Positions 10,174 through 51,623 of a stretch of DNA of 64,000 bases are shown here, one piece after another. Below the pieces are notes generated by a model, which made no database searches, was not told where the DNA came from, and was given only the letters and a program-made list of their open reading frames with translations. The stretch covers positions 1 through 64,000 of the IMG/VR virus record IMGVR_UViG_3300043464_001630, one strand, 5' to 3'. Each line of letters opens with the position of its first letter. Within the stretch, counting starts at the first letter, position 1. The translations under genes were made by a program, and so were the position numbers.

Positions 10174-10776
10174 GTGAGACAAAATTATATTAAGATTTCT
10201 AAGCTAGCTAAAGATCTAGGAGTAACTAAACAAACTCTTTGGAACTGGAAATATGCTGGTGAAGTTGATTTTGTTAAAATAGGTGGGTTAAATTGTGTAA
10301 CTAAAGAAACATACAATAATCTATTAGGAATAGAAAACAAGAAAAAAGAATCTGTTGTGATTTATTGTAGGGTTTCTTCGACGGAAAATAAATCTAATAT
10401 AGAAACACAAAAACAAAGATTGTTAAATTATTGCAATGCAAAAGGTTACAAAGTATCTGATGTGATACAAGAGTTTGGTTCTGGTATCAACGATAAGAGA
10501 CCAAAACTCGAAAAATTATTAAAACAGCAAAATTTTACAAAACTAGTAGTAGAACATAAAGATCGTCTAACAAGAGTAGGATTTAATTATATCAATACAC
10601 TGCTAAACTTCAATCATATTGAGATTGAAGTAGTTAATTCTGTTGATGATGATAGAACTGATTTAATACAAGATTTCATATCAATTATTACATCTTATTG
10701 TGCTAGAATTTACGGCAACAGAAGATCAAAAAGAAAAACTGAACAATTAATAAAGGAGCTTGAATCCAATGAGTAG
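10174..10776 (+). CDS. tnpA: IS607 serine recombinase TnpA
   Basis: N-terminal HTH (LGVTKQTLWNW), IYCRVSS, GSGINDKR, VEHKDRLTR, DLIQDFISIITSYCARIYG. Confidence 0.93.
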   Translation: MRQNYIKISKLAKDLGVTKQTLWNWKYAGEVDFVKIGGLNCVTKETYNNLLGIENKKKESVVIYCRVSSTENKSNIETQKQRLLNYCNAKGYKVSDVIQEFGSGINDKRPKLEKLLKQQNFTKLVVEHKDRLTRVGFNYINTLLNFNHIEIEVVNSVDDDRTDLIQDFISIITSYCARIYGNRRSKRKTEQLIKELESNE

Positions 10777-12355
10777 ATGCACAAAGAGTTATTCTTTCTA
10801 CTCGAAAGATCTTAACATAGGCAAATTCAATCTCTTTTTGAAGAAAGCCGAAGCAGTCAGAGATTATAAGAATGCTTTATCTGTCGAAATTTCATCTAAT
10901 CTCTTGAAGTACACTGAAGTTTCTAAGTTTGATTTCCTTAAAATGTTTGGTACGAAAACTAATTATTTGAATCCTAGCTCATTAATGAGAGGAAACGAAA
11001 TACAAAAAGCTGTAGCGGATGTGTTTGAAGCTTATCAAAATAAAATAACACAAATTAAACAAAAAATGTCTTTCTTTGTTCAAAAAGGAAAAGAGGTAGA
11101 ATTTTACAAAAGAAACACAAAAAATAATAAAAAAGGTGATGTTAGAAGTTATGAAATAAAAACTAAAAATACTCCATTGACAAAAACAATCACATTTCTA
11201 TCTCGTTATGGTTCCGAAAACACACTAGATTATGTCAATAAAAGAGCGAATCAAAATGATGACAAACAAGATTTCTATAAGACACTAAAAATACATATTC
11301 AAAAGTTTGGCTTAGAAAGATTGTCGAAACTTGCTTACAGCAAAAGAACACAAGTTCTAAATAAGTATAATTATCCAATCACATTCACCTCTCTATCTTA
11401 TCGTTCTGCTCTTCAGACGAACGATCCTTTGATTCAAAATTCCAAGAACAAAACATTTTCAAATGGAACTATTTCAATACCAAGCTTTAATGGAAAACAT
11501 ATGTTTGTTCCGACTACATTCAATGTAAAACATCATGGTCATTTGAATCAATATAAATCAAAAGAGTATATAATTTGTATCGAACAAAAGCGAAAAAGAA
11601 TCAGACTGATTACTACAAAAGAAACAGAAGAAACTATTTCTCCAGAAGGAATAAATTATTTAGGTGTTGACACCAACGTCAAACATAATCTATTTGCTAC
11701 TTCAGATGGAATGAATATTGACATGGACAGAGATTTGTTTCATGGTTATATTGCTTTTCTAAAGAAATACCAAGACAAGAAAGAACATACTTCTGGAGAA
11801 GATCAACAATTTGAACTATGGCAAGAACGTGTTCAGTGTATGCTCAAAAAGAAAGCTAGAGAGTTAGTTGATGTGGCTATAGCTTCTGGTAAGAATCATA
11901 TCATCATGGAAGATCTTGGTAACTTTGGTAAATCTTACACTAAATCAGAAGAGTTCGAAGGATTCAAATATTCTAGATTAACACGATTACTCAATCTTTC
12001 TTCTCTAAACAAAATTGTTAAAGGCATTTGTAAGAAGCTTGGTGTTAGACTAACTCTCATTCCTTCTCATTATACATCTCAGTGGTGCTTTGACTGTGGA
12101 CACATAGACAAAGCTAACAGAACCACCCAAGAAATTTTCCAATGTGTTTGTTGCAATGTAACAGCAAATTCAGACTTTCATTCTTCACGAGCCATCCTTA
12201 GGATAGGTTCTTCAGACGTTCTGAAGAGCAATATGCTCGTGATGGATAAATCATTCGATTGGATTCCTAAGAAACTCTCAAAAGGTTTCATAAGAAAACA
12301 ATTGGAAGAAATAATTCCTAAAACAACTTTTCAGTTGAATTGTCAAACTTTATAG
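10760..12355 (+). CDS. tnpB: TnpB RNA-guided RuvC nuclease (long, 531 aa)
   Basis: LGVD (RuvC-I), IMEDL (RuvC-II), YTSQWCFDCGH...CVCC Zn ribbon, NSD (RuvC-III). Confidence 0.88.
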   Translation: MNPMSRCTKSYSFYSKDLNIGKFNLFLKKAEAVRDYKNALSVEISSNLLKYTEVSKFDFLKMFGTKTNYLNPSSLMRGNEIQKAVADVFEAYQNKITQIKQKMSFFVQKGKEVEFYKRNTKNNKKGDVRSYEIKTKNTPLTKTITFLSRYGSENTLDYVNKRANQNDDKQDFYKTLKIHIQKFGLERLSKLAYSKRTQVLNKYNYPITFTSLSYRSALQTNDPLIQNSKNKTFSNGTISIPSFNGKHMFVPTTFNVKHHGHLNQYKSKEYIICIEQKRKRIRLITTKETEETISPEGINYLGVDTNVKHNLFATSDGMNIDMDRDLFHGYIAFLKKYQDKKEHTSGEDQQFELWQERVQCMLKKKARELVDVAIASGKNHIIMEDLGNFGKSYTKSEEFEGFKYSRLTRLLNLSSLNKIVKGICKKLGVRLTLIPSHYTSQWCFDCGHIDKANRTTQEIFQCVCCNVTANSDFHSSRAILRIGSSDVLKSNMLVMDKSFDWIPKKLSKGFIRKQLEEIIPKTTFQLNCQTL

Positions 12356-23437: not shown

Positions 23438-23466
23438 TTGACATAGTTATTTTAATAATGTATAAT
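23438..23466 (+). promoter_or_regulatory. Perfect consensus sigma70 promoter before very AT-rich ORF 23486
   Basis: TTGACA-N17-TATAAT with TG extension. Confidence 0.8.
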
Positions 23467-40667: not shown

Positions 40668-41090
40668 ATGAACGACGAGCGGTTGATATGGGAAGCCTAC
40701 AAAAGTAGAGAGGTAGAAACTATGGAATTTCCTATGTTATCTAAACCTAATGGAGTGTCGTATCGAGGCAAACCAGATTGGAAAAAATTTAAAGTAAATG
40801 GCTATTACAGGGATGGTGATGTATTAAGATACATATATTCACAACACAAAGAATTCGAAGACGACCACCGAGTAAAAAGAATTTATAAATTAATATCAAT
40901 AGATCCAAATAAATTAGAACCCAGCGAATGGGAAATAGATGATTATAAAGTAGAAGATTTGTCTAAGTCTAATGAACCATATCCTCCAATCGTAATCAAT
41001 AAAAACAAATCTATCGTAGATGGCGGACACAGATTAGAAGCAGCAAAAGTTAGAGGAGATAAAGAAATTCTAGTATTCTTACAACAATAA
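40668..41090 (+). CDS. MND-leader ParB/Srx domain protein
   Basis: MNDERLIWEAY; YPPIVI...IVDGGHRLEAA. Confidence 0.7.
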   Translation: MNDERLIWEAYKSREVETMEFPMLSKPNGVSYRGKPDWKKFKVNGYYRDGDVLRYIYSQHKEFEDDHRVKRIYKLISIDPNKLEPSEWEIDDYKVEDLSKSNEPYPPIVINKNKSIVDGGHRLEAAKVRGDKEILVFLQQ

Positions 41091-42163
41091 GAATTCGGTA
41101 GTGTATAAACTAATAGAGGATTCTTTATTATTTAAATAACAAGAAATATCTACTAATAAACTATACCTAAAATAATAGACAATCCTCTATTAGTACTAAA
41201 CAGACTAATGATATACTTATCAACTAGGCAAAATTTGCCTAGTAAGATACAAAAATAGTCGTTATTATTCATTTTTTTGTAGTAAACCAGAAAAAAATTC
41301 CTGTTTTTGTTACGAATGTTTGTATATTGTATACAATACATAACGAAATAACATCGTGAAGGTACACGGTGTTTACTCTGTTGGAGGGATAAATATCGAG
41401 TCTTTTTATTTACAAACGATAAAAACTTGTAAAAAGAATAAAAGTGTCGACACTCTATAAAGTTGAACTCGTCCAAAATTATTTTTTATCAAAAGTCAAG
41501 TAAATTTTTAAAGTCCTCCTTCTAGGCGATTTTAGGTTGTGTACAGAGAGAACAGATATTTCTTTACTATTTTACTAGAAGATCCTCTATTCCTTTGATC
41601 CCAAAAAACGACAGATCCTTATATGTCAATAAAAAAATGCTAGCTCTAGCATCAAAAAGATGTTTTACAGAGAGAACAGAAAGTCAACACAAAAATTTCC
41701 CCAATAAAAAAACTAAAGAATCCTCTACAACTCACCGATATATTCTTATGACCGAAACATTATTTGAACTTTGGGTAGAGCGGCAGATCGACAGAATCGA
41801 CCGTGAATACATGAACGACCAGTTATCAGAAGAAGAGTACACTAATAAAATGAAAGAATTGAATAAGATGGAAGAAGAGTTCATCAATAATCTCGTACTA
41901 GAAAAATGCACTCTCTAGTAACAAAAACATGTACGCTTGTTATATTCATTTGTATATTAGAACGGTTACTATAAACTCGTGAATATAATAAACTCGTGAC
42001 TCTATGAGAAAAGTTTCGTTCTCGGGCAGAAGTCTCGCTCCCCCACACAAACGCTACGCTTCCACTCCAGAGTCCAGCACCAAATAGTAGTTGACACCTT
42101 CTATCTACAGTATATTATACAGTAGTAATAAAAGATCCTCTATAACTCACAGAATTAACAAAT

Positions 42164-42430
42164 ATGAATAACCTTATTGATCCTCTCAAAATTATCAAAT
42201 CCACGAATGGCAAGTTCTTCAGTATCTCTTATACTAATAAGAAGGGAGAGACGAAAGATTACATTTGTCGTATAGGCGTAAAGAAGCACCTGCGTGGAGG
42301 CGAAAAGTACTTTGTGCCCGATAGTGTTACTGTTTATTCTGTTACTAATAGTAATAAAGGATACAAGACATTTGTAAGAGAACAAATAAACAGTATTAAA
42401 GTGGGTACTACCCTGTGGAGTGGAGTGTAA
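42164..42430 (+). CDS. Small SH3/WYL-like phage protein
   Basis: GKFFSISYTNKKGE...RIGVKKHLRGG. Confidence 0.45.
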   Translation: MNNLIDPLKIIKSTNGKFFSISYTNKKGETKDYICRIGVKKHLRGGEKYFVPDSVTVYSVTNSNKGYKTFVREQINSIKVGTTLWSGV

Positions 42431-42465
42431 AGGTAATTTGTCAGGGTCACCTCTCTTCTCTCCTT

Positions 42466-45400
42466 TGTTCCATGTGGAACATTCTCCAACGGAGAGAAGA
42501 GAGGATTCTGGGGAGAGTATAGTGGTTATGTTTAGAATGAATATGTTCTTATGCACATAATGCATAATGATTATTAGATATGCTTATAATGCATAAGAAC
42601 TATTAGATATGCACATAATACATGTGTGTTATTAGGTATGCTTAAATTGCATATTAGTTTCGCTTATCTGGGGTTTTCTCGTGGTTTAGGTCAGACCCTC
42701 CCCCCACCTCAAGGTTAATAAGAATCCTCTACTAATGGAAGGTTTATTTTCACTTTTTTTGGGTTTGTTTAGAAAAGGTCAGACCCTCCCCCCGTACCTC
42801 TAGGTTAGTATGCGATCCAGTATTTTAGCAAGAAAAAAGAAAAATAAAAATAGTGCTAAAGAAAAAAGATTTTCAGTTTTTCCTAAAGAGTTTTTTTCAA
42901 ATGCCTATTAAAAGGAGCCATGCAATTTACAAATTCCATTTGCTTAGAGTTAGCTACCCTTGCCTCTCTCAATCAGTTAGAGAAGCTCGCCGAGCGCCTG
43001 ACTGAATTGCAGCCCTTAGTTAAACAGGGACGCGGAACATGGGGGGAGAATATTGAAAAGATGTTGGCTTTTCTCTCTGACCGAAAGCCCCGCTTCTCCA
43101 TCTTTGCCAAGGGAAACGGAAAACTGCCGTTTGCTGCGTTTTCTGTGCTTCCGCTTGTTTCCTGCCCCGGTTCTGGTGCTTGTAAAAACTGGTGCTATTC
43201 TCTGAAAGCATGGCGATATCCAGCGGCTTTCTTTCGCCAGTTGCAGAACCTAATTCTTTTGATGTCCCCAGAGGGGCGGAAAACTGTCGCAGAGGCATGG
43301 AACAAGCTCCGCAAGGGGGCGCATGTTCGGTTGTACGTTGATGGGGACATTCACTCTCTTGAGATTCTAGAATATTGGCAGAACCTTTGTCGCCAGCGTT
43401 CAGATTTGCAGGTTTATGGGTATTCTAAAAGCTGGGGAATATTCTTGCGTTTCGATGGAGAATGGGCGTCGAACTATACTCTCAACCTTTCAAGCGGTTC
43501 GAAGTTTGTAAACAGCCCTAAAGTAAAAGAACAAATTTCCGCCCTTCCGATTGTGCGGGGTGAGTTTGTGGCTGTTCCCGTGGCTTCGAAGGCTCCAAAG
43601 CGCAACCTTAAAACGGGTCAGCCTCTGAACCCCGCAGCATGGCAGTCTCATAGGTTAGAGGTTCTAGCCGCTGCAAAGAAGCTAGGAATGGGTAAAGTGT
43701 TTGTTTGTCCGGGTTTGTGTGGATTCTGTGCAAACGGAAAACACGCTTGTGGCAATCGTGCATTTAACGGAATTCCGATTGTGATTGGAATCCATTAAAA
43801 TAGTTCTAAAGAATCCTCTATTCTTTGCCGATTAGTATATACCGGAAGGTTCGATCCCTTCCGGTTCACTCAGAAACCCAAAAAACAGCCATGATGCTCA
43901 AAGCCAAAAAATCGAAAAAGTCACAAAAAATTGTAATTGCATTCCCGATTGCAAACACTAATGGTCAAATGGTTTCGATTCATACAACCGTTGGAAAGTA
44001 TTCTTTTATTCTTGATTACTGGGCTGGTGATGCCGTCGAAAACGCTCTCAAGAGAATCGAGGAAGAGAATGTCACCGGAATCGGTTTTACGACAGCAAAC
44101 GGAACACCGATTCAAGTAAGGTTGCTAGATTAGCAGGTTTTAGAGAATCCCCTACTCTTTACGAAGGGCGGGGGATTCTCCGTTGTTCCACATGGAACAT
44201 TATAGGAACAGATAATAGGTTAAACCCTCCCGTCCTTCCTCTAGGTTAATAAGGATTCTCTATTACTACAACAGAAAAGAAAAAAAAGTTTCTGCTAAAG
44301 TTTTCTAGAAACCTGTTACTGATTCTTTGTTCCACATGGAACATTCCAGAATCTAGTGAGTATACAAACCCTCCCGTCACACCTATAGGTTAATAGAGAA
44401 TCCTCTATTCTTACAACCTTTTTCTTTTTTATTTTTCTGCTAAAGTCTTTCACCTTTCTTGCCTATTAGTAGTTATGCCGAAACATTCCTCTGACATTGC
44501 TTACGAGTTGACAAACCTCTTGAAGTTTGAAAGCATGAAAAGCGTTGGCGAATTTAGTGAAGCCTACGTCATCGGATACTTGAGCAGTATCTTGAAGAAT
44601 CTTGCAAAGTATCCTGAGGTTCAGCGTGAACTGGAAAAAGAAGTAGAAAGAATAAAAAAGTACTAAAGACGCTCTGCTGAAAAACCGACTACTCTGTATG
44701 ACTGTAAAACTGATCAACGCCGCAATCAAACACCTCAACCTCGAAATCATCAAAGGAAGCGGATACGTTTATTTTCTTGACTTGACTACTGGATATCAGG
44801 TGGGCGACTCTGTGCATATTGCATACCTCAATCATGTCAGCTTGGATCGGTGGATCGAAGAAGCCGAAGGTGCAAGAAAAGACGAAGAAGTAAAAAAGTT
44901 CTAAAGAATCCTCTACAAATACCGACTACTATATACCAGAAGGTCCAATCCCTTCTGGTTCACTCAGAAACCTTAGTACATTATGGAAAAACTCACCTTG
45001 GAAGAAATCACCCGCATTGCTGAAAAACTGGGAGTCAAGTTGGACGGGAATCCAACGCCAGCGCAGAAAGCCGAAATCGCAAACATACTTGTCACCCTTT
45101 TGGAAGTTGAAGCGAAACTGAAAAAGAACTAAAGTCTCTCCGAGAAAAACCGATTACTATATACCGGAAGGTTCCAGTCCTTCCGGTTCTCAACCCAAAA
45201 ACCAAACTACATTCTATGATCACCAAAAACGAAAACGGCACACTCTCAATCGGCGACATTCAAATCGTTTCTTCTTATAACAAAGAAACAAAGCAGCATA
45301 CCTTCAATCTGCTTAAAGCGGGTTGTGTTCCCGTTCAGCATATCGGGAATCACCTGACGCTCCGAAACAATATCACGAAACTGGTGGAACAAGTAGAAGC

Positions 45401-46291
45401 TACCTACGTTGAGGAAGTGGCCTCAGAAGTGGCCTCAGAATCGTTCAGCGAGACTATTCTGGACATTACAGAATTCGTTCAGATTCCAGTCGACGACAAC
45501 GCCCCCACTTCTGAGTCAGAAGATTATAACCTCTTCAAGGATTATCTAAAGAAATTCTCCGAAGCTACCGGAGAGGAACGGGAGAAATTTGCGGAGATTG
45601 CCAGTCAGATTCTCCTTGGCATGAACATTCAAGCGGTGTAAAGAATCCCCCCGCCACACTCACTAGAGACTCCCCCCTATCTAGTGAGTGTGGTATCTTT
45701 TTCACTTCTCTATTAAAAATGAATTTATAGCATATTCGTTTTTATATCATCGAGTCGTGAGTCAACCAAAAAAATCCCGCTCTCCCCTAAAAACGCTAGG
45801 CTCCTACACACAAGCGTAGGACTCCCACAAAAATAATACGGGGGCGCAAATAGTTCTAAAGAATCCTCTACAGTTGCCGATAGATATAGTGTCAGCGTAG
45901 TAAACCTTAAATTCACTTCTTATGTTCCAAGCAAACCTTGTCAAAGCTGTCTCTCACTACCCGCTCTCCAAGTTGATCCCTGATTCTATCGGAAACGAAA
46001 AAGACGAAGGTCTCTATGACTATTTTATCGACAGTCTTTCCGAAGGACGTATTGTGGGAGCAGGAGCTACTTTTATGCTTCTCGAACCCAAACTGTTCAG
46101 GAAGCACCTAATGAGTGCTCTAGAATTCGGCGAATTCAATCTCGCCGCTCTTGAGATTGAAGATATCCTAAGAACAACTGACACTCTGATTCTCCGCGAC
46201 ATTCACGTTTCATTGGCAGAGTAAAGAAGAAAGAAGTAGTCCCCTATGCTCTACGGAGTGTAGGGGATTCTCTATTGTTCCACATGGAACA
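42466..46291. repeat. Four parS-like 16-bp palindromes TGTTCCAYRTGGAACA (42466, 44184, 44328, 46276)
   Basis: Read directly; one mismatch from the parS palindrome TGTTCCACGTGGAACA. Confidence 0.7.
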
Positions 46292-46670
46292 TTCGGGAAT
46301 AGTAAGATACACTATAAGCATATCTTATATGCATTATGATGTATAAGCATAACTTCTAATAATAATATATAAGAACCTCCGCCCTCCCCCCTCCCTTTCA
46401 GTATATCACACTTGTCAAGCCCCAGTTTTGAGAGACTGGAATAGGCCAAACCCTCCCCCCGCCTCTAGGTTAATAAAGAAACAAGTGGTTTGTGAAGGTT
46501 TATTTTCACTTTTTTTCTGAGCTTTTACAATTCCAGACAGACCCTCCCTTCCGCCTCTAGGTTAGTTTGAAAATAATAGTTCTGTCAATCCCTTTTTTTG
46601 CAGAAAAAAAGAAAAGGTCATACCCTCCCGTCACGCCGATAGGTTAGTCCGCAAAACAGGGGGCAGTCAA
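42695..46670 (-). promoter_or_regulatory. Seven minus-strand units: A-tract, TTGACA-like, N17-18, TAACCT, AGAGG-like, N3-5, GGGAGGGT
   Basis: + strand ACCCTCCC...AGGTTA at 42695, 42783, 44224, 44368, 46450, 46541, 46622. Confidence 0.7.
42920..43798 (+). CDS. Gp88-like Cys-rich protein
   Basis: GNGKL, SCPGSGACKNWCY, RLYVDGDI, YGYSK, CPG.CG.C. Confidence 0.7.
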   Translation: MQFTNSICLELATLASLNQLEKLAERLTELQPLVKQGRGTWGENIEKMLAFLSDRKPRFSIFAKGNGKLPFAAFSVLPLVSCPGSGACKNWCYSLKAWRYPAAFFRQLQNLILLMSPEGRKTVAEAWNKLRKGAHVRLYVDGDIHSLEILEYWQNLCRQRSDLQVYGYSKSWGIFLRFDGEWASNYTLNLSSGSKFVNSPKVKEQISALPIVRGEFVAVPVASKAPKRNLKTGQPLNPAAWQSHRLEVLAAAKKLGMGKVFVCPGLCGFCANGKHACGNRAFNGIPIVIGIH

Positions 46671-47740
46671 ATTTATTTTCATTTATTTTTAACCTGTGTA
46701 AATCGTTGAGAATCATTAACTTACGAAGTTTTCGCGTTTAAAGGCGATTCTAGGGGGGTTTCTACCGTGTCAGCTATGATCACCCTACCGGCAATAGAAA
46801 GGGGATCAGAACGGGATTCTTGGCGATTCCAGAGTGGGTTCCTGTATTAGGTTCCGGTGAGCTTTTTCCCTACCGGCGAACCCTACCGACGAACCGTTGA
46901 AAACTTTTTTGCTAGTGTAACTTTCGGAAATATAGGGACTTATAAAATTATTTAAAAAAAGAGCTTAAGGGATTTGCCATTTCGTTCGAATACTAGGGTA
47001 GGTCAGCGAGATTCCGCTGGCTTGGCCGCGAGAGGCAAGGGAAGTCTCCGCTAGGGCTGGAACCTATGGTTACCAGAGTTGATGGTGCTCTCTGAAGAGG
47101 CTCGCAGAGGAATGTCCGATAGAATACGGGACGGTTCCGGTTGCTCAGGCTAGTACCCTGAGTGGCTACCAGCGAAGGTACACAGTATTTGTGGGGTTTG
47201 TCGCCAGCGTTTTACGGTTACCGAGATAGGGAATCCGAGAATAGAGCGTTGGCAATCAAACACTAATTAAGATTATGAAAATAACAAATGCCGTTTCCGC
47301 CGCTAATTCTAGTGATTTTGTTTATTCGGAAAATGTTAGGTACGTTTTTATCTGTAAAATGATCGAATCCCGAATCTCTTCACGACTTTTTCTGATTGAT
47401 GATTCGAAAGAACAAAAGTTACAGGATATAATTAATGGCGATTGGCGCAAAACCTTGGGATGTATTGATGAGCAGATTAAAAATCTAGAAAAAGAGCGGA
47501 TTCCTTTGGAGAAATGGCTCCGCGACAACGGAGCAAACGACGACGATTTAGACCATAGTTTGTGGTGCGACGACACAGATTGGAGAGCATGGGTAAATGA
47601 GGATTAGGTATTGTGTTCAGCCCCTTACACAATTCGGTGTAGGGGGCGCGGTTATAAGTGTTTTGCTTTCAGCCTTTTGTCAGTCCCGCTGTAGGGCACT
47701 GAGTTCACAAAGGGTTGAATAACAGTACACTAATTAAATT

Positions 47741-49273
47741 ATGACCCCATCAAAGTATCAAACCGCTGCAATCAACTGGATGACAAGCGGAAGCGGAAAC
47801 GCAGTTATTAGCGCAGTAGCAGGAAGCGGAAAGACGACTCTTTTGCTCATGATGCTGAAAGAGTTGTTCAAAGAAGGAAAGTGTCCCTCAGTGGCTTGCC
47901 TAGTGTTTGCGAAGAAAAACCAAGTGGAAATGGACTATAAGCTCAAAAGGGAAGGGATTCCCGCCGAGTCTTATACGGTTCACTCGCTTTGCCTCAGGGC
48001 ATATAGGAAGTTTGTTCCTAACTTCAAACTCGAAGGAAGGAAAGTGAGACTAATCCTCGAAGAAAACCTATCGTCTGAGGACTTTAGTCTCTATGCAACC
48101 GCTTGCGAAAAACTGGTTAAGTTCGCAAAGGACGACGGGGCCGGAATTTTTTGGCCCATTGCGGATGCTGCTCAATGGCAGCGCCTTATGGCGCATCATG
48201 ATGTCGAACTAGAGAACGATGCCACGATGGATCGGGCGATTGAGATTTGTCAGAAAACCTTAGAAGCGAACAATAAAGAGAAAATCTTTATAGATTTCTC
48301 TGATATGATTTATCTTACTCTGTTGAACGGGTACACTTTACCGAAGTTTGACTGGGTACTGGTGGACGAAGCGCAGGATTTAAGTCCCCTTAGACAAGCG
48401 GTTTGCTTTGCTTTGAAGGGAGAAAACACTCGCTTCGTTTTCCCCGGCGATAGAATCCAAGCAGTGTTTGGGTTCACTGGCGCGGATGCGGAGTCTCTGG
48501 ACAATATCAAATCCGCTTACAACGCTACAGAGCTACCGTTGTCAGTGTGTTACCGCTGTTCAAGCTCAGTGGTGAACCACGCAAAGCAATGGAATCCCGT
48601 AATTGAATCAGCACCAAACGCTGAAACGGGAAGCGTTACCGAAATGCCCTACACCGCGCTGACGGAAAAGCCTGAGTCTCTTAACCTTTCGTACAAAGAC
48701 GCGATCCTTTGCCGGACTAATGCGCCTTTGATGCGCACCGCGTTTTCTCTGATCAAAAAGGGAATCCCGTGCAGAATTGAGGGGCGGGACATCGCTCAGG
48801 GGCTCATTAACGTAATCGGAAAATGGAAAGTTAAGACACTGGACGCTCTCGAAAACCGCCTTTCCGATTACTTGGATCGCGAAACGCAAAAGGCTCAGAC
48901 TAAGGGTAATGAGGCTTTGGTAGGCGTCATAACCGATAAGGTGGATTGCATTAGGGCTTGCATGGAAAAGTGCTACCTCGAAGGCAAGACCCGCGTTGAC
49001 GACCTCAAAGCATTGATTGATAGCATGTTCTCGAACGCGGACGATAAGACAACCCGCCGCGACTTGCTCACCCTTTGCTCTGTCCACAAATCAAAGGGGC
49101 TGGAATGGGAACGAGTCTTTCTACTTGGGCGTCAAGACTTTATGCCTTCCAAGTGGGCAAAGAAAGACTGGATGAAGGTTCAGGAAACTAACCTTATCTA
49201 TGTAGCTATCACCCGCGCCAAGAGAGACTTAGTCGAAGTCACCGGAGTGTCTGAGTACCTCAAAGGCAAGTAG
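47741..49273 (+). CDS. UvrD/Rep-like superfamily 1 helicase
   Basis: AVAGSGKT, VDEAQD, GDRIQAVFGFTGA, YRC, ILCRTN, VHKSKGLEW, YVAITRAK. Confidence 0.92.
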   Translation: MTPSKYQTAAINWMTSGSGNAVISAVAGSGKTTLLLMMLKELFKEGKCPSVACLVFAKKNQVEMDYKLKREGIPAESYTVHSLCLRAYRKFVPNFKLEGRKVRLILEENLSSEDFSLYATACEKLVKFAKDDGAGIFWPIADAAQWQRLMAHHDVELENDATMDRAIEICQKTLEANNKEKIFIDFSDMIYLTLLNGYTLPKFDWVLVDEAQDLSPLRQAVCFALKGENTRFVFPGDRIQAVFGFTGADAESLDNIKSAYNATELPLSVCYRCSSSVVNHAKQWNPVIESAPNAETGSVTEMPYTALTEKPESLNLSYKDAILCRTNAPLMRTAFSLIKKGIPCRIEGRDIAQGLINVIGKWKVKTLDALENRLSDYLDRETQKAQTKGNEALVGVITDKVDCIRACMEKCYLEGKTRVDDLKALIDSMFSNADDKTTRRDLLTLCSVHKSKGLEWERVFLLGRQDFMPSKWAKKDWMKVQETNLIYVAITRAKRDLVEVTGVSEYLKGK

Positions 49274-50160
49274 CCTTCAGAGTTGCGGCTCAGGGGAGTT
49301 CAATCCTCTCCTGAGCCCTTCGCGTTTAAATGCCCTTTAAAAGGCTCCACCCCCTTCGTCAGTATCTCCACCGCCCCCCGCCCCCTATAGGCCATTAGAA
49401 ACCCCCGTAGCGTTCCGCCATTAGGGGATCATGATTGTCCCCTCAGTTCCGTTCACACAATAAACTCACGTTGGTAATAGATTCGCGTTCACATTACACA
49501 CTCAACCCACTCTAATAAACTCATGAGAGACACACACTTCCCTAACTTTGTTCACCTTATCCTTTCCAATAATCCTTCAGCCTATGCCAAGCAAGTGCTT
49601 ATTAGAGAGTCTAGTCTGTACTACAGAGACTTCTATTCCTCTTGCTACGTCCTGACTCTGGACGAAAAAGACTTCGCCATTAACAGAGCGGTGGAAAGGT
49701 TCTCTGAGTATGTAAACCTTTCGAAATCAACGCTAGACTCACTGGACGCGGTTAAGACTGCTGTCGCTCAGGTGCTTCAAGAATCTTATACTGAGTCTAT
49801 TCAAAGAACTTTCAAAGCTAAGGGGTTGGCTATGGTATAGGCGACCTCTCCTAATACGGGGCTCCCTTTTTCGGAAGGGGGTTCCCGTTTCAGGAAGCGT
49901 GCCACCTAGCGAAAAAGAAAGTTTTATTTTCTACTAAAGTTTTTGGGAGAACGGGGCTCTTCTATGCAGGTCGAGCATTTTAATTTGCGGCTTGCGTAAG
50001 TTGCATGACTGGTCGGGTGAGGGGGCATTGCCAAAATTTTTTTTGCAAATTTCTGGAAATTTTACTAAAGGCGATTTTTTAATATACAATCCTCTATTAT
50101 TTCCAGATCTTTTTTTGATATTTTAATTTTATATTTTTGTTGAGTAAAATATACGAAATT

Positions 50161-51561: not shown

Positions 51562-51623
51562 AGGATTATTTATATAAACAGAAAATTCTTGACGTTTCTG
51601 AAAAAAGAAATTATAATAAATCT

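What the first reader, a model, noticed from the sequence alone, without database searches (positions are those of the whole stretch)
42695..46670. Seven tandem antisense promoters that all begin a G-rich GGGAGGGU RNA with no gene downstream
Seen on the minus strand: A- or T-tract, -35 (TTCCAT, TTGCTA, TTGTAG, TTGTAA, TTCACA, TTGACA, TTGACT), 17-18 variable nt, invariant TAACCT, then AGAGG-like, N3-5, GGGAGGGT. They form clusters of 2+2+3, face against all local genes and point into parS-like and AT-rich DNA; a UvrD-like helicase gene lies about 1 kb away. Known: T4 origins and ColE1 prime replication through promoter-driven R-loops, which G-rich RNA favours. Inference: a multi-copy R-loop origin/partition locus. 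Alternatives are RNA-polymerase sinks aiding DNA entry, or small RNAs whose GGAGG 5' end sequesters the anti-SD of host ribosomes in favour of leaderless phage mRNA.
Basis: partly seen in the sequence, partly recalled or inferred. Interest (0 to 1): 0.8.

Follow-up and report, generated by a model that had tools for sequence, protein, structure and literature searches.

The report
Antisense promoters aimed at parS sites
A family of freshwater jumbo phages carries, at one spot in the genome, a battery of backward-facing promoter-like elements with an invariant G-rich start that encode nothing and fire into centromere-like (parS) sites and AT-rich repeat blocks; this looks like a replication or segregation control region run by non-coding transcription, but that is not proven.

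Summary
TAACCT-N9-11-GGGAGGGT occurs exactly seven times, all on the minus strand, in three intergenic gaps (0 expected). An eighth variant site adjoins cluster 3. The window is the first 64 kb of a 236-kb jumbo-phage contig, and the element occurs nowhere else in it. In 8 sequence sets (window plus 7 related metagenomic loci) I found 35 non-identical copies. Both blocks are invariant; the -35-like hexamer (26/35 start TTG), the 17-18-nt spacer and an 83% A+T upstream tract behave like sigma70 promoter parts. A distant relative has TTGACG-N17-TACACT-N9-GGGAGGG, which supports that reading. No ORF, Rfam family or trans target lies downstream. Each cluster fires into a chromosomal-type parS palindrome (TGTTCCAYRTGGAACA; 4 sites, 0.24 expected). 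Clusters 1 and 3 first cross AT-rich blocks; block 1 has ATGC-N7-GCAT palindromes 29 bp apart. Many copies sit back-to-back with sigma28-like sense promoters of leaderless genes. Best reading (about 0.4): a cis-acting origin/centromere-type region worked by host-polymerase transcription.

The parts
42693..42762 (-). Antisense promoter module P1: A/T tract, weak -35 TTCCAT, 17-nt spacer holding the TAGAGGATTC box, TAACCT (42717-42712), G-block 42702-42695
42781..42853 (-). Antisense promoter module P2: -35 TTGCTA, 18-nt spacer, TAACCT 42807-42802, G-block 42790-42783. Sits back-to-back with the sense promoter of the GP88-family gene.
44222..44293 (-). Antisense promoter module P3: -35 TTGTAG, 17-nt spacer with box, TAACCT 44248-44243, G-block 44231-44224. 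The GTTCCAYRTGGAAC core of the parS-like site starts 33 nt after the first G of the block.
44366..44438 (-). Antisense promoter module P4: -35 TTGTAA, 18-nt spacer with box, TAACCT 44392-44387, G-block 44375-44368. The parS-like core starts 33 nt after the first G. Sits back-to-back with the sense promoter of gene 44475.
46448..46518 (-). Antisense promoter module P5: -35 TTCACA, 18-nt spacer, TAACCT 46472-46467, G-block 46457-46450
46539..46610 (-). Antisense promoter module P6: consensus -35 TTGACA, 18-nt spacer, TAACCT 46564-46559, G-block 46548-46541
46620..46692 (-). Antisense promoter module P7: -35 TTGACT, 18-nt spacer, TAACCT 46646-46641, G-block 46629-46622
46376..46418 (-). Eighth, variant promoter-like site: TTGACA-N7-TGaTATACT (extended -10 type)-N4-GGGAGGGGGGAGGG, directly upstream of AT block 2. 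In relatives its hexamer drifts (TAGACT, TAAGCT, TAGAAT).
42520..42680 (.). AT-rich block 1 with four 15-bp ATGC-N7-GCAT palindromes exactly 29 bp apart (42551, 42580, 42609, 42638). On the minus strand it is A-rich and G-poor.
46300..46375 (.). AT-rich block 2 with two degenerate sites of the same kind 29 bp apart (46307, 46336)
42466..42481 (.). parS-like palindrome TGTTCCATGTGGAACA, enclosed in the loop of the long hairpin 42450-42504
44184..44199 (.). parS-like palindrome TGTTCCACATGGAACA downstream of P3, followed by hairpin 44142-44181
44328..44343 (.). parS-like palindrome TGTTCCACATGGAACA downstream of P4
46276..46291 (.). parS-like palindrome TGTTCCACATGGAACA downstream of P5-P8 and AT block 2, followed by hairpin 46241-46267
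42884..42909 (+). Sigma28-like sense promoter (TAAAG-N15-GCCTATTA) of the GP88-family gene, divergent partner of P2
44441..44467 (+). Sigma28-like sense promoter of the leaderless gene 44475-44666, divergent partner of P4
46693..47274 (.). Conserved non-coding stretch upstream of cluster 3 (in the minus sense), with CGGTAGGG repeats and a roughly 44-nt near-invariant run
42164..42430 (+). 88-aa gene that flanks AT block 1 in most relatives where this region was recovered; the predicted small beta-barrel resembles WYL/Sm domains
47741..49273 (+). UvrD/Rep-family SF1 helicase gene bounding the locus

Best explanation
The seven sites, plus an eighth variant, are most likely real promoters read by the host's sigma70-type RNA polymerase. 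Each has an A/T-rich UP-like tract, a TTGnnA -35, a 17-18-bp spacer and a fixed TAACCT -10. The inferred start is about 7 nt later, so the RNA would open with a purine-rich GGGAGGGU block. They encode nothing. They belong to one conserved cis-acting region of the phage replicon, between an 88-aa gene and a UvrD-like helicase gene. Each cluster transcribes, within 35-250 nt, into a chromosomal-type parS palindrome. The two multi-copy clusters first cross an AT-rich, strand-asymmetric block; block 1 holds palindromes spaced 29 bp apart. I read the locus as an origin/centromere-type maintenance region in which the act of transcription is the working part. Transcription would open or activate the AT-rich blocks, following the logic of lambda, T4, T7 and ColE1. 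It would also sweep, confine or be blocked by ParB on the parS sites, and put negative supercoils into the divergent sigma28-like sense promoters. SHOWN: the sequence architecture, its conservation and its restriction to one locus. INFERRED: promoter activity, the start site, ParB binding and any replication role. The exact invariance of TAACCT and GGGAGGGT remains unexplained.
For: - Seven exact copies against 0 expected. The only copies in the 236-kb contig lie here, and likewise in a 242-kb relative.
- There are 35 non-identical copies in 8 sequence sets, with both blocks invariant and a 9-11 nt gap.
- The spacer is 17-18 nt in 32/35 copies, the -35 starts TTG in 26/35, and the 22 nt upstream are 83% A+T.
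- Distant relative L036 has TTGACG-N17-TACACT-N9-GGGAGGG at two sites.
- The eighth site's hexamer drifts as TAnnnT.
- Four parS-type 16-mers (0.24 expected) lie one per promoter run. Relatives have 1-4 each, two of them perfect (consensus from PMC7022226).
- Four ATGC-N7-GCAT sites lie 29 bp apart.
- The block is strand-asymmetric in 7 lineages.
- Tandem promoters occur only where an AT block follows.
- The non-coding gaps are 489, 341 and 1050 nt.
- A promoter upstream of lambda ori must transcribe past the origin, and ColE1 is primed by a host-RNAP transcript (PMC5043065).
Against: - No RNA data.
- TAACCT matches TATAAT at only 3 of 6 positions, while textbook TTGACA-N17-TATAAT sites exist elsewhere in the window.
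- Total invariance of the two blocks is unlike ordinary sigma70 promoters.
- Cluster 2, and many copies in relatives, have no AT block and simply fire back through the preceding gene's terminator.
- The blocks are C>G rather than G-skewed.
- No initiator, primase, polymerase, ParA or full ParB gene is in the window; there is only a weak 140-aa ParB-N-like hit.
- The cumulative skew shows no clear turn.
- The same parS 16-mer occurs in more than 120 other viral contigs, so it is not special in itself.
Confidence: 0.4

Rival explanations
1. Regulatory or insulator cassettes of an accessory (possibly anti-defence) gene island, with no replication or partition role. The antisense promoter is the back-to-back partner of a sigma28-like sense promoter. 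It makes a short cis-antisense RNA over the 3' end of the preceding gene and blocks read-through. The TAGAGGATTC box in its spacer and the palindrome near +33 serve as operators for repressors, in the manner of KorB or Aca.
For: - In 17 of 35 copies a divergent CTTTAG lies 23-25 nt upstream of the -35, and at 38 nt in 5 more.
- The box lies in the spacer of 22/35 copies and also in the spacers of nearby sense promoters.
- Copies with the box have weaker -35s: 3.5 against 4.5 of 6.
- The palindrome sits at a fixed 31-35 nt from the G-block in single copies.
- The small genes between cassettes differ among relatives.
- L036 has an AcrF31-family gene next to the 88-aa homologue.
- The 88-aa protein resembles the WYL domains of defence regulators.
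Against: - Tandem second and third copies have no sense partner.
- The AT-rich palindrome blocks lie where they can regulate no sense promoter.
- The exact invariance of the G-block is not needed for interference.
- The Foldseek matches are not significant (E about 0.07).
Confidence: 0.25
2. The element is a promoter for a different sigma factor, phage-encoded or alternative. TAACCT(A) is the -35 element and GGGTYT or TYTGA the -10. The 9-11 nt 'gap' is simply a promoter spacer with the usual +/-1 play. Transcription then starts after the G-block, so the RNA is not G-rich.
For: - Two invariant blocks with a +/-1 flexible spacing is how sigma -35/-10 pairs behave.
- TAACCT contains the AAC typical of ECF -35 elements. 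GGGTAT-like and TCTGA-like -10s are known for sigmaB/F and sigmaE types (my own knowledge).
- A relative's contig encodes a 166-aa Sigma70_r2/r4 protein 7.5 kb from the 88-aa gene.
- The phage clearly uses a non-sigma70 class, sigma28-like, for sense genes.
Against: - The conserved A/T tract and TTGnnA at 17-18 nt would have no role.
- In L036 the hexamer is TACACT with TTGACG exactly 17 nt upstream.
- The eighth site has the G-block but no TAACCT, and instead an extended -10 type hexamer 4 nt upstream.
- No sigma gene was found in the window.
Confidence: 0.12
3. The RNA itself is the product. One version is an abundant decoy whose 5' GGAGG ties up the anti-SD of host 30S subunits, to the benefit of the phage's SD-less and leaderless mRNAs. 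Another is a hairpin or repeat RNA that mimics a host RNA, as RNA anti-CRISPRs or pseudo-antitoxins do, to block a defence system.
For: - Only 1 of 72 genes has GGAG/GAGG upstream.
- About 10 of the 22 sense sigma28-like promoters put ATG 6-7 nt after the -10-like block.
- UP-like tracts and tandem arrangement suggest high output.
- The window's block has 29-nt tandem repeats.
- The predicted RNAs fold better than shuffles: z -6.9, -4.3 and -3.0.
Against: - GGGAGGGU is not the best SD, and its invariant flanking G and U are unexplained by that role.
- The 5' G-run is predicted to pair internally.
- Absence of SD from phage genes more simply means the host does not need SD.
- Tandem repetition is not conserved: periods of 29, 16 or 7 nt, or none.
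- The block sequence and length drift without compensatory structure.
- There is no Rfam match, and no complementary CCCUCCC target anywhere else in 64 kb.
Confidence: 0.08
4. These are not promoters at all. They are composite protein-binding DNA sites, for example for recombination, packaging or a phage-specific DNA-binding protein, that only resemble promoters.
For: The invariance of the two blocks is greater than is usual for promoter hexamers. The locus is full of other palindromic sites.
Against: The strict single orientation, the A/T tract, the TTGnnA at 17-18 nt, the covariation of -35 quality with box presence, and the L036 variant all fit promoter grammar. No recombinase or terminase gene adjoins the locus.
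Confidence: 0.05

Closest known systems
Transcription-activated or transcription-primed origins: lambda ori (PR), ColE1 RNA II (PMC5043065); T4 ori(uvsY)/ori(34) and the T7 primary origin with tandem promoters 1.1A/1.1B plus an AT-rich stretch (my own knowledge)
   Same: One or more promoters read by a known polymerase fire into an AT-rich, repeat-bearing, non-coding stretch. The promoters are tandem in the two clusters with AT blocks, there is no protein product, and a helicase gene lies nearby.
   Different: No replication start has been mapped. G-richness is limited to about 12 nt at the RNA 5' end and the block is C>G. There is no RNA I-type antagonist and no initiator gene alongside. The same promoter module also occurs where there is no AT block.
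Chromosomal ParB-parS centromeres (TGTTNCACGTGAAACA; M. xanthus TGTTCCACGTGGAACG; PMC7022226)
   Same: Four 16-bp palindromes, each one base from the consensus, are clustered within 3.8 kb. Relatives have perfect copies. GTTCCAC is a documented ParB half-site.
   Different: No ParA or full-length ParB gene is in the window. Three sites lie within about 50 nt downstream of a promoter-like element and the fourth just beyond an AT-rich block fed by one, which is not a described feature of parS. In the window the central CG is CA/TG.
KorB (ParB family) operator network of plasmid RK2 (my own knowledge)
   Same: A palindromic ParB-type site is placed at fixed short distances from several promoters of one replicon, which suggests repression by a ParB-like clamp.
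   Different: No KorB or KorA homologue was found. The sites lie downstream of the promoters rather than at the -35.
Promoter-early stem-loop (PeSL) cassettes of T4-type phages (my own knowledge)
   Same: Conserved promoter-plus-hairpin modules flank small, variable genes in a plastic region, so the modules could also serve recombination.
   Different: PeSL promoters point with the genes. Here the conserved sigma70-like arm points against them, and it carries an invariant transcribed block.
Stable-RNA (rrn P1-P2) and T7 A1-type strong promoters (my own knowledge)
   Same: Tandem arrangement, A/T-rich UP-like tracts, a G/C-rich stretch after the -10 and a purine-rich initial transcribed sequence.
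   Different: There is no stable RNA gene downstream, and the -10 hexamer is non-consensus and fixed.

Membership tests
sigma70-type bacterial promoter | -35 hexamer related to TTGACA placed 17+/-1 bp upstream of the -10 | tested here: met
   The spacer is 17 or 18 nt in 32/35 copies. The hexamer starts TTG in 26/35, and is TTGACA, TTGACT, TTGACC or TTCACA in the copies without the box. L036 has TTGACG at 17 nt.
sigma70-type bacterial promoter | -10 hexamer with A at position 2 and T at position 6, drifting around TATAAT | tested here: inconclusive
   TAACCT keeps T1, A2 and T6 but matches TATAAT at only 3 of 6 positions and never varies in 35 copies. It reads TACACT in L036. The eighth site's hexamer does drift as TAnnnT.
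sigma70-type bacterial promoter | Transcript 5' end 6-8 nt after the -10 | not testable with these tools
Transcription-primed (R-loop) origin, T4/ColE1 type | Promoter followed directly by an easily unwound AT-rich element | tested here: inconclusive
   Met for clusters 1 and 3: the cluster-1-type block is 61-76% A+T across 7 lineages against 42-48% G+C for the locus, and block 2 is visibly AT-rich. Not met for cluster 2 or for many single copies in relatives.
Transcription-primed (R-loop) origin, T4/ColE1 type | Transcript composition that favours a persistent RNA-DNA hybrid (G-rich or purine-rich RNA over the hybrid zone) | tested here: not met
   Only the first 20 nt or so are purine-rich (mean 68%). 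Across the block G is 6-13%, C is about 21% and purines are 50-60%.
Transcription-primed (R-loop) origin, T4/ColE1 type | DNA synthesis starts at the site | not testable with these tools
   This needs marker-frequency or nascent-strand data.
Chromosomal-type parS centromere | 16-bp palindrome matching TGTTNCACGTGNAACA | tested here: met
   Four sites with 1 mismatch against 0.24 expected at up to 2 mismatches. Perfect copies occur in L014 and L030. The consensus was taken from PMC7022226.
Chromosomal-type parS centromere | Cognate ParB (HTH) and ParA encoded alongside | tested here: not met
   No ParA or full ParB family appeared in the Pfam scans of 68+20 ORFs. There is only a weak ParB-N-like 140-aa protein at 40668-41090. 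Use of the host's ParB is possible but untested.
Chromosomal-type parS centromere | ParB binding, spreading and stabilisation of the replicon | not testable with these tools
   This needs ChIP, EMSA or a plasmid-stability assay in the unknown host.
Type III antitoxin-like repeat RNA / RNA decoy | Near-identical tandem repeats transcribed from a promoter and closed by a terminator | tested here: not met
   The window has 29 nt x 3.2 at 76-82% identity. Relatives show 16-nt or 7-nt degenerate repeats, or none.
Known RNA families (Rfam 15) | Match to a covariance model | tested here: not met
   No relevant hit at E<=1 in 40-50 kb. No tRNA or tmRNA.

The most novel reading that the evidence does not exclude
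The short RNAs are made in bulk as Shine-Dalgarno mimics. With GGAGG in their first dozen nucleotides they would occupy the anti-SD of host 30S subunits. Translation would then shift to the phage's own messages, which carry no SD at all and are often leaderless from sigma28-like promoters. This would be a phage-encoded RNA that reprograms ribosome choice.
Probability: 0.05. Interest if true: 0.9.

Novelty: new variant of a known kind. Interest (0 to 1): 0.6.

Why it matters
Origins and segregation sites of jumbo phages are almost unknown. If this reading is right, the locus is a compact, sequence-defined candidate in which host-polymerase promoters, host-type parS sites and AT-rich palindrome arrays are wired together, and mini-replicon, ParB ChIP and 5'-end mapping experiments can test it directly. 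It would also show a large phage borrowing the host's chromosomal centromere code. Whatever the function, two things ask for a new recognition partner. One is the 14 invariant bases (TAACCT and GGGAGGGT) kept across 35 copies while a neighbouring ordinary -10 hexamer drifts. The other is a phage-wide system of sigma28-like promoters driving leaderless, SD-free genes.

Tried and rejected
- Close relatives among deposited phages and plasmids: none by megablast. Protein-level hits to the helicase, RNR and a DUF932 protein gave no host or family assignment.
- Single motif hits in other contigs (L003, L005-L013, L015-L019, L021-L028) lack the A/T tract and -35 context, and I set them aside as chance.
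- Rfam and tRNA scans found nothing.
- The simple sigma70 scanner does not call these sites, because TAACCT scores 3/6.
- Structured small-RNA gene: the block drifts in length and sequence without compensatory pairs. Only the terminal hairpin covaries, and it lies at the 3' end of the sense gene.
- Trans-acting antisense RNA: no CCCTCCC target outside the elements.
- Canonical G-quadruplex: 0/35 main copies have four G3 tracts; 33/35 have only a two-tetrad pattern.
- Repeat-RNA decoy: the repeats are not conserved.
- Leaderless micro-ORFs at the predicted starts: only P4 and P7 have GTG there, so this is not general.
- Function of the flanking GP88-family protein: unknown, with no PDB or NCBIfam help.
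- Small locus proteins: no Pfam, NCBIfam or informative PHROG hits.
- Sigma factor in the window: not found.
- Literature: none of the sequence words has been described, and PF17338 is not mentioned in any paper.

Full report
OBSERVATION. The pattern TAACCT-N8-13-GGGAGGGT occurs exactly seven times in the 64-kb window. All copies are on the minus strand at the coordinates given, and none appeared in 100 dinucleotide-preserving shuffles. Laid in register, every copy has an A/T-rich tract, a -35-like hexamer, 17-18 variable nt and TAACCT. Then come A/T-N-N-GG, a total gap of 9-11 nt, and GGGAGGGT-Y-T. They lie in three intergenic gaps of 489, 341 and 1050 nt, between plus-strand genes that have protein homologues in relatives. 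No conserved minus-strand ORF follows any copy. An eighth, variant site adjoins cluster 3 at 46376-46418 (TTGACA-N7-TGaTATACT-N4-GGGAGGGGGGAGGG).

WHERE IT COMES FROM. The window equals positions 1-64000 of a 236-kb IMG/VR contig from a freshwater-lake time series. It encodes ribonucleotide reductase, ThyX, a Clp protease, an IS607-like resolvase/TnpB pair and many unknowns. No deposited phage or plasmid is close. The 42-50 kb stretch is 42-48% G+C against about 32% elsewhere. Collection scans found the element only at this locus in the contig, and at the syntenic locus of a 242-kb relative.

CONSERVATION. Motif scans and, independently, homologues of the flanking 88-aa protein gave seven related loci holding the element, plus two more at 71% protein identity. 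Together with the window they hold 35 non-identical copies. Even when mismatches were allowed in the search, TAACCT and GGGAGGGT were exact in every copy and the gap was 9-11 nt. Around them the sequence varies freely.

ARE THEY PROMOTERS? Four things fit sigma70 grammar.
- The -35-like hexamer starts TTG in 26/35 copies and sits 17 or 18 nt from TAACCT in 32/35.
- The 22 nt upstream average 83% A+T, including in tandem copies that have no divergent partner.
- In the most distant relative that carries the element (L036), it reads TTGACG-N17-TACACT-N9-GGGAGGG at two sites. The hexamer has changed while keeping T1, A2 and T6.
- The eighth site's hexamer drifts as TATACT, TAGACT, TAAGCT and TAGAAT, mostly with an upstream TG.

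Textbook TTGACA-N17-TATAAT sites exist elsewhere in the window, so the host polymerase presumably reads ordinary promoters. What does not fit is the total invariance of a hexamer that matches TATAAT at only 3 of 6 positions, and of an 8-nt block in the predicted initial transcribed region. A rival reading takes TAACCT as a -35 and GGGTYT/TYTGA as a -10 for another sigma, with the 9-11 nt as spacer play. A relative's contig encodes a small Sigma70_r2/r4 protein nearby, although the window does not. I put about 0.7 on sigma70-type promoters starting roughly 7 nt after TAACCT.

THE CASSETTE. Read on the plus strand, a typical gap contains these parts in order:
- the 3' end of a gene;
- a GC hairpin;
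- the palindrome GTTCCAYRTGGAAC;
- the antisense element;
- an A/T tract;
- a sense promoter-like element, TAAAG-N15/16-(G/A)CCGAT(T/A);
- the next gene.

The sense element matches the sigma28/FliA consensus as I remember it. It occurs 22 times on the plus strand between 22 and 46 kb (23 hits in all, against 6.8 expected). About 10 of the 22 have ATG 6-7 nt after it, which implies leaderless mRNAs. A divergent CTTTAG lies 23-25 nt from the antisense -35 in 17 copies. A box, TAGAGGATTC, lies in the antisense spacer in 22/35 copies. Those copies have weaker -35s (3.5 against 4.5 of 6), and the box also occurs in the spacers of nearby sense promoters. This suggests an operator.

WHAT THEY POINT AT. 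With its flanks the palindrome reads TGTTCCAYRTGGAACA. The literature gives TGTTNCACGTGAAACA as the conserved chromosomal parS, GTTCCAC as a ParB half-site, and TGTTCCACGTGGAACG as the Myxococcus consensus (PMC7022226). The window has exactly four sites one base from TGTTNCACGTGNAACA, against 0.24 expected at up to two mismatches. One lies downstream of each promoter run. Relatives have 1-4 each, two of them perfect. In single copies the palindrome starts 31-35 nt after the G-block. Clusters 1 and 3, the only ones with promoters in tandem, first cross AT-rich blocks. Block 1 has four ATGC-N7-GCAT palindromes exactly 29 bp apart, and block 2 has two degenerate ones. Across seven lineages the block changes length and sequence but keeps such words. 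It is followed by a long hairpin that exists in two entirely different self-complementary versions around the invariant parS-like core. The block is strand-asymmetric in all lineages. On the transcribed sense A is 39-50%, C about 21% and G 6-13%. That speaks for a direction-specific role, but it is the opposite of the G-skew that favours long R-loops. It looks more like Rho-loading RNA.

WHAT THE RNA IS NOT. There is no Rfam family or tRNA. No complementary CCCTCCC occurs elsewhere in 64 kb. No canonical G-quadruplex motif is present in the 35 main copies. Tandem repetition is not conserved. The predicted RNAs fold better than shuffles, but mainly through hairpins that also lie at the 3' ends of the sense genes.

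CONTEXT PROTEINS. The GP88-family gene between clusters 1 and 2 and the small genes have no known function. The 88-aa protein is predicted (pLDDT 81) to be a small beta-barrel. Its best, non-significant matches are the WYL domains of BrxR, CapW and DriD, and Hfq. L036 has an AcrF31-family gene next to it. This keeps an 'accessory or anti-defence island' reading alive. Only a weak 140-aa ParB-N-like protein lies nearby.

MECHANISM. I commit, at about 0.4, to a cis-acting maintenance region (origin plus centromere-like sites) run by non-coding host-polymerase transcription. The tandem promoters would open or activate the AT-rich blocks. A promoter upstream of lambda ori must transcribe past the origin, and ColE1 is primed by a host-RNAP transcript (PMC5043065). 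T4 and T7 origins pair promoters with AT-rich elements (my own knowledge). Transcription would also meet ParB on the parS sites and supercoil the divergent sense promoters. The main rival (0.25) is a purely regulatory or insulating cassette of a variable gene island. The anti-SD sponge is not excluded: only 1 of 72 genes has an SD. However, GGGAGGGU is a sub-optimal SD, its invariant flanks are unexplained, and lack of SD more simply reflects the host.

NOVELTY. Promoters, parS sites and transcription-dependent origins are all known, and the parS 16-mer alone occurs in more than 120 viral contigs. New here are three things: the fixed coupling of a backward-facing promoter class with an invariant transcribed block to parS-type sites and palindrome arrays, its confinement to one locus, and its setting in a phage that otherwise runs on sigma28-like promoters and SD-free, often leaderless genes. 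I rate this a new variant of known kinds, with interest 0.6.

Noticed in passing
window 22396-45880, plus strand: There are 22 plus-strand matches (23 hits against 6.8 expected) to TAAAG(TTC)-N10/11-(G/A)CCGAT(T/A), a sigma28/FliA-like promoter consensus. About 10 have ATG 6-7 nt after it, which implies a phage-wide class of leaderless genes under a non-housekeeping sigma.
   Followed up: partly
window 43844-43866, about 44940-44962 and 45166-45188, plus strand: Three sense leaders begin with a hairpin that copies a tRNA T-arm (CCGGAAGGTTCGATCCCTTCCGG, with a TTCGATC loop). It could be a 5' stabiliser or an RNase P/tRNA-enzyme handle. The same hairpin occurs in L002 and L014.
   Followed up: no
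whole window, upstream of start codons: Only 1 of 72 genes has GGAG/GAGG at -20 to -4. About 30 have a TAAATAA-like word 3-14 nt before the ATG, so translation appears to be SD-independent throughout.
   Followed up: partly
window 46693-47274: A non-coding stretch is conserved in L030 and L002 (74% column identity), with a roughly 44-nt near-invariant run, four CGGTAGGG-type repeats and GC-rich segments. A hairpin near 47180-47235 keeps its pairs through double changes. This is possibly a structured leader, a non-coding RNA or a DNA element. There is no Rfam hit.
   Followed up: partly
window 42000-50000: An island of 42-48% G+C lies in a genome of about 32% G+C. It covers the promoter locus and the helicase gene, and the same arrangement is seen in relatives.
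   Followed up: no
window 39360, 40479, 41179, 41717, 43810, 44905, 45860, 50086 (plus strand) and 41124 (minus strand): The box A(G/C)AATCCTCTA, an imperfect palindrome TARAG-AATC-CTCTA, recurs around the locus. It lies in the spacers of sense promoters and, inverted, in the arms of the long hairpin in relatives. It is a candidate operator for a locus-specific regulator.
   Followed up: partly
window 42164-42430: The 88-aa protein is predicted as a stand-alone WYL/Sm-like beta-barrel (TM about 0.56 to BrxR; E about 0.07). It has its own sigma70-like promoter at 42091 (TTGACA-N16-TATTAT).
   Followed up: partly
L036 1420-1560 and 1156-1305: In a distant relative two copies of the promoter-like element face each other about 50 nt apart. 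An AcrF31-family (anti-CRISPR) gene sits next to the 88-aa homologue.
   Followed up: no
window 10174-12355: An IS607-like pair is present: a serine resolvase N-terminal domain plus a TnpB/Cas12f-like TNB domain.
   Followed up: no
window 23438-23466 and 51589-51617 (plus strand), 52504 (minus strand): Near-perfect TTGACA/TTGACG/TTGACT-N17-TATAAT promoters occur here, in contrast to the fixed TAACCT class.
   Followed up: no
window, ORFs not individually assigned: Two DUF1501 proteins and one DUF1552 (HXXSHH) protein are present. As I recall, these families are abundant in Planctomycetes and Verrucomicrobia, so they are a possible host hint.
   Followed up: no
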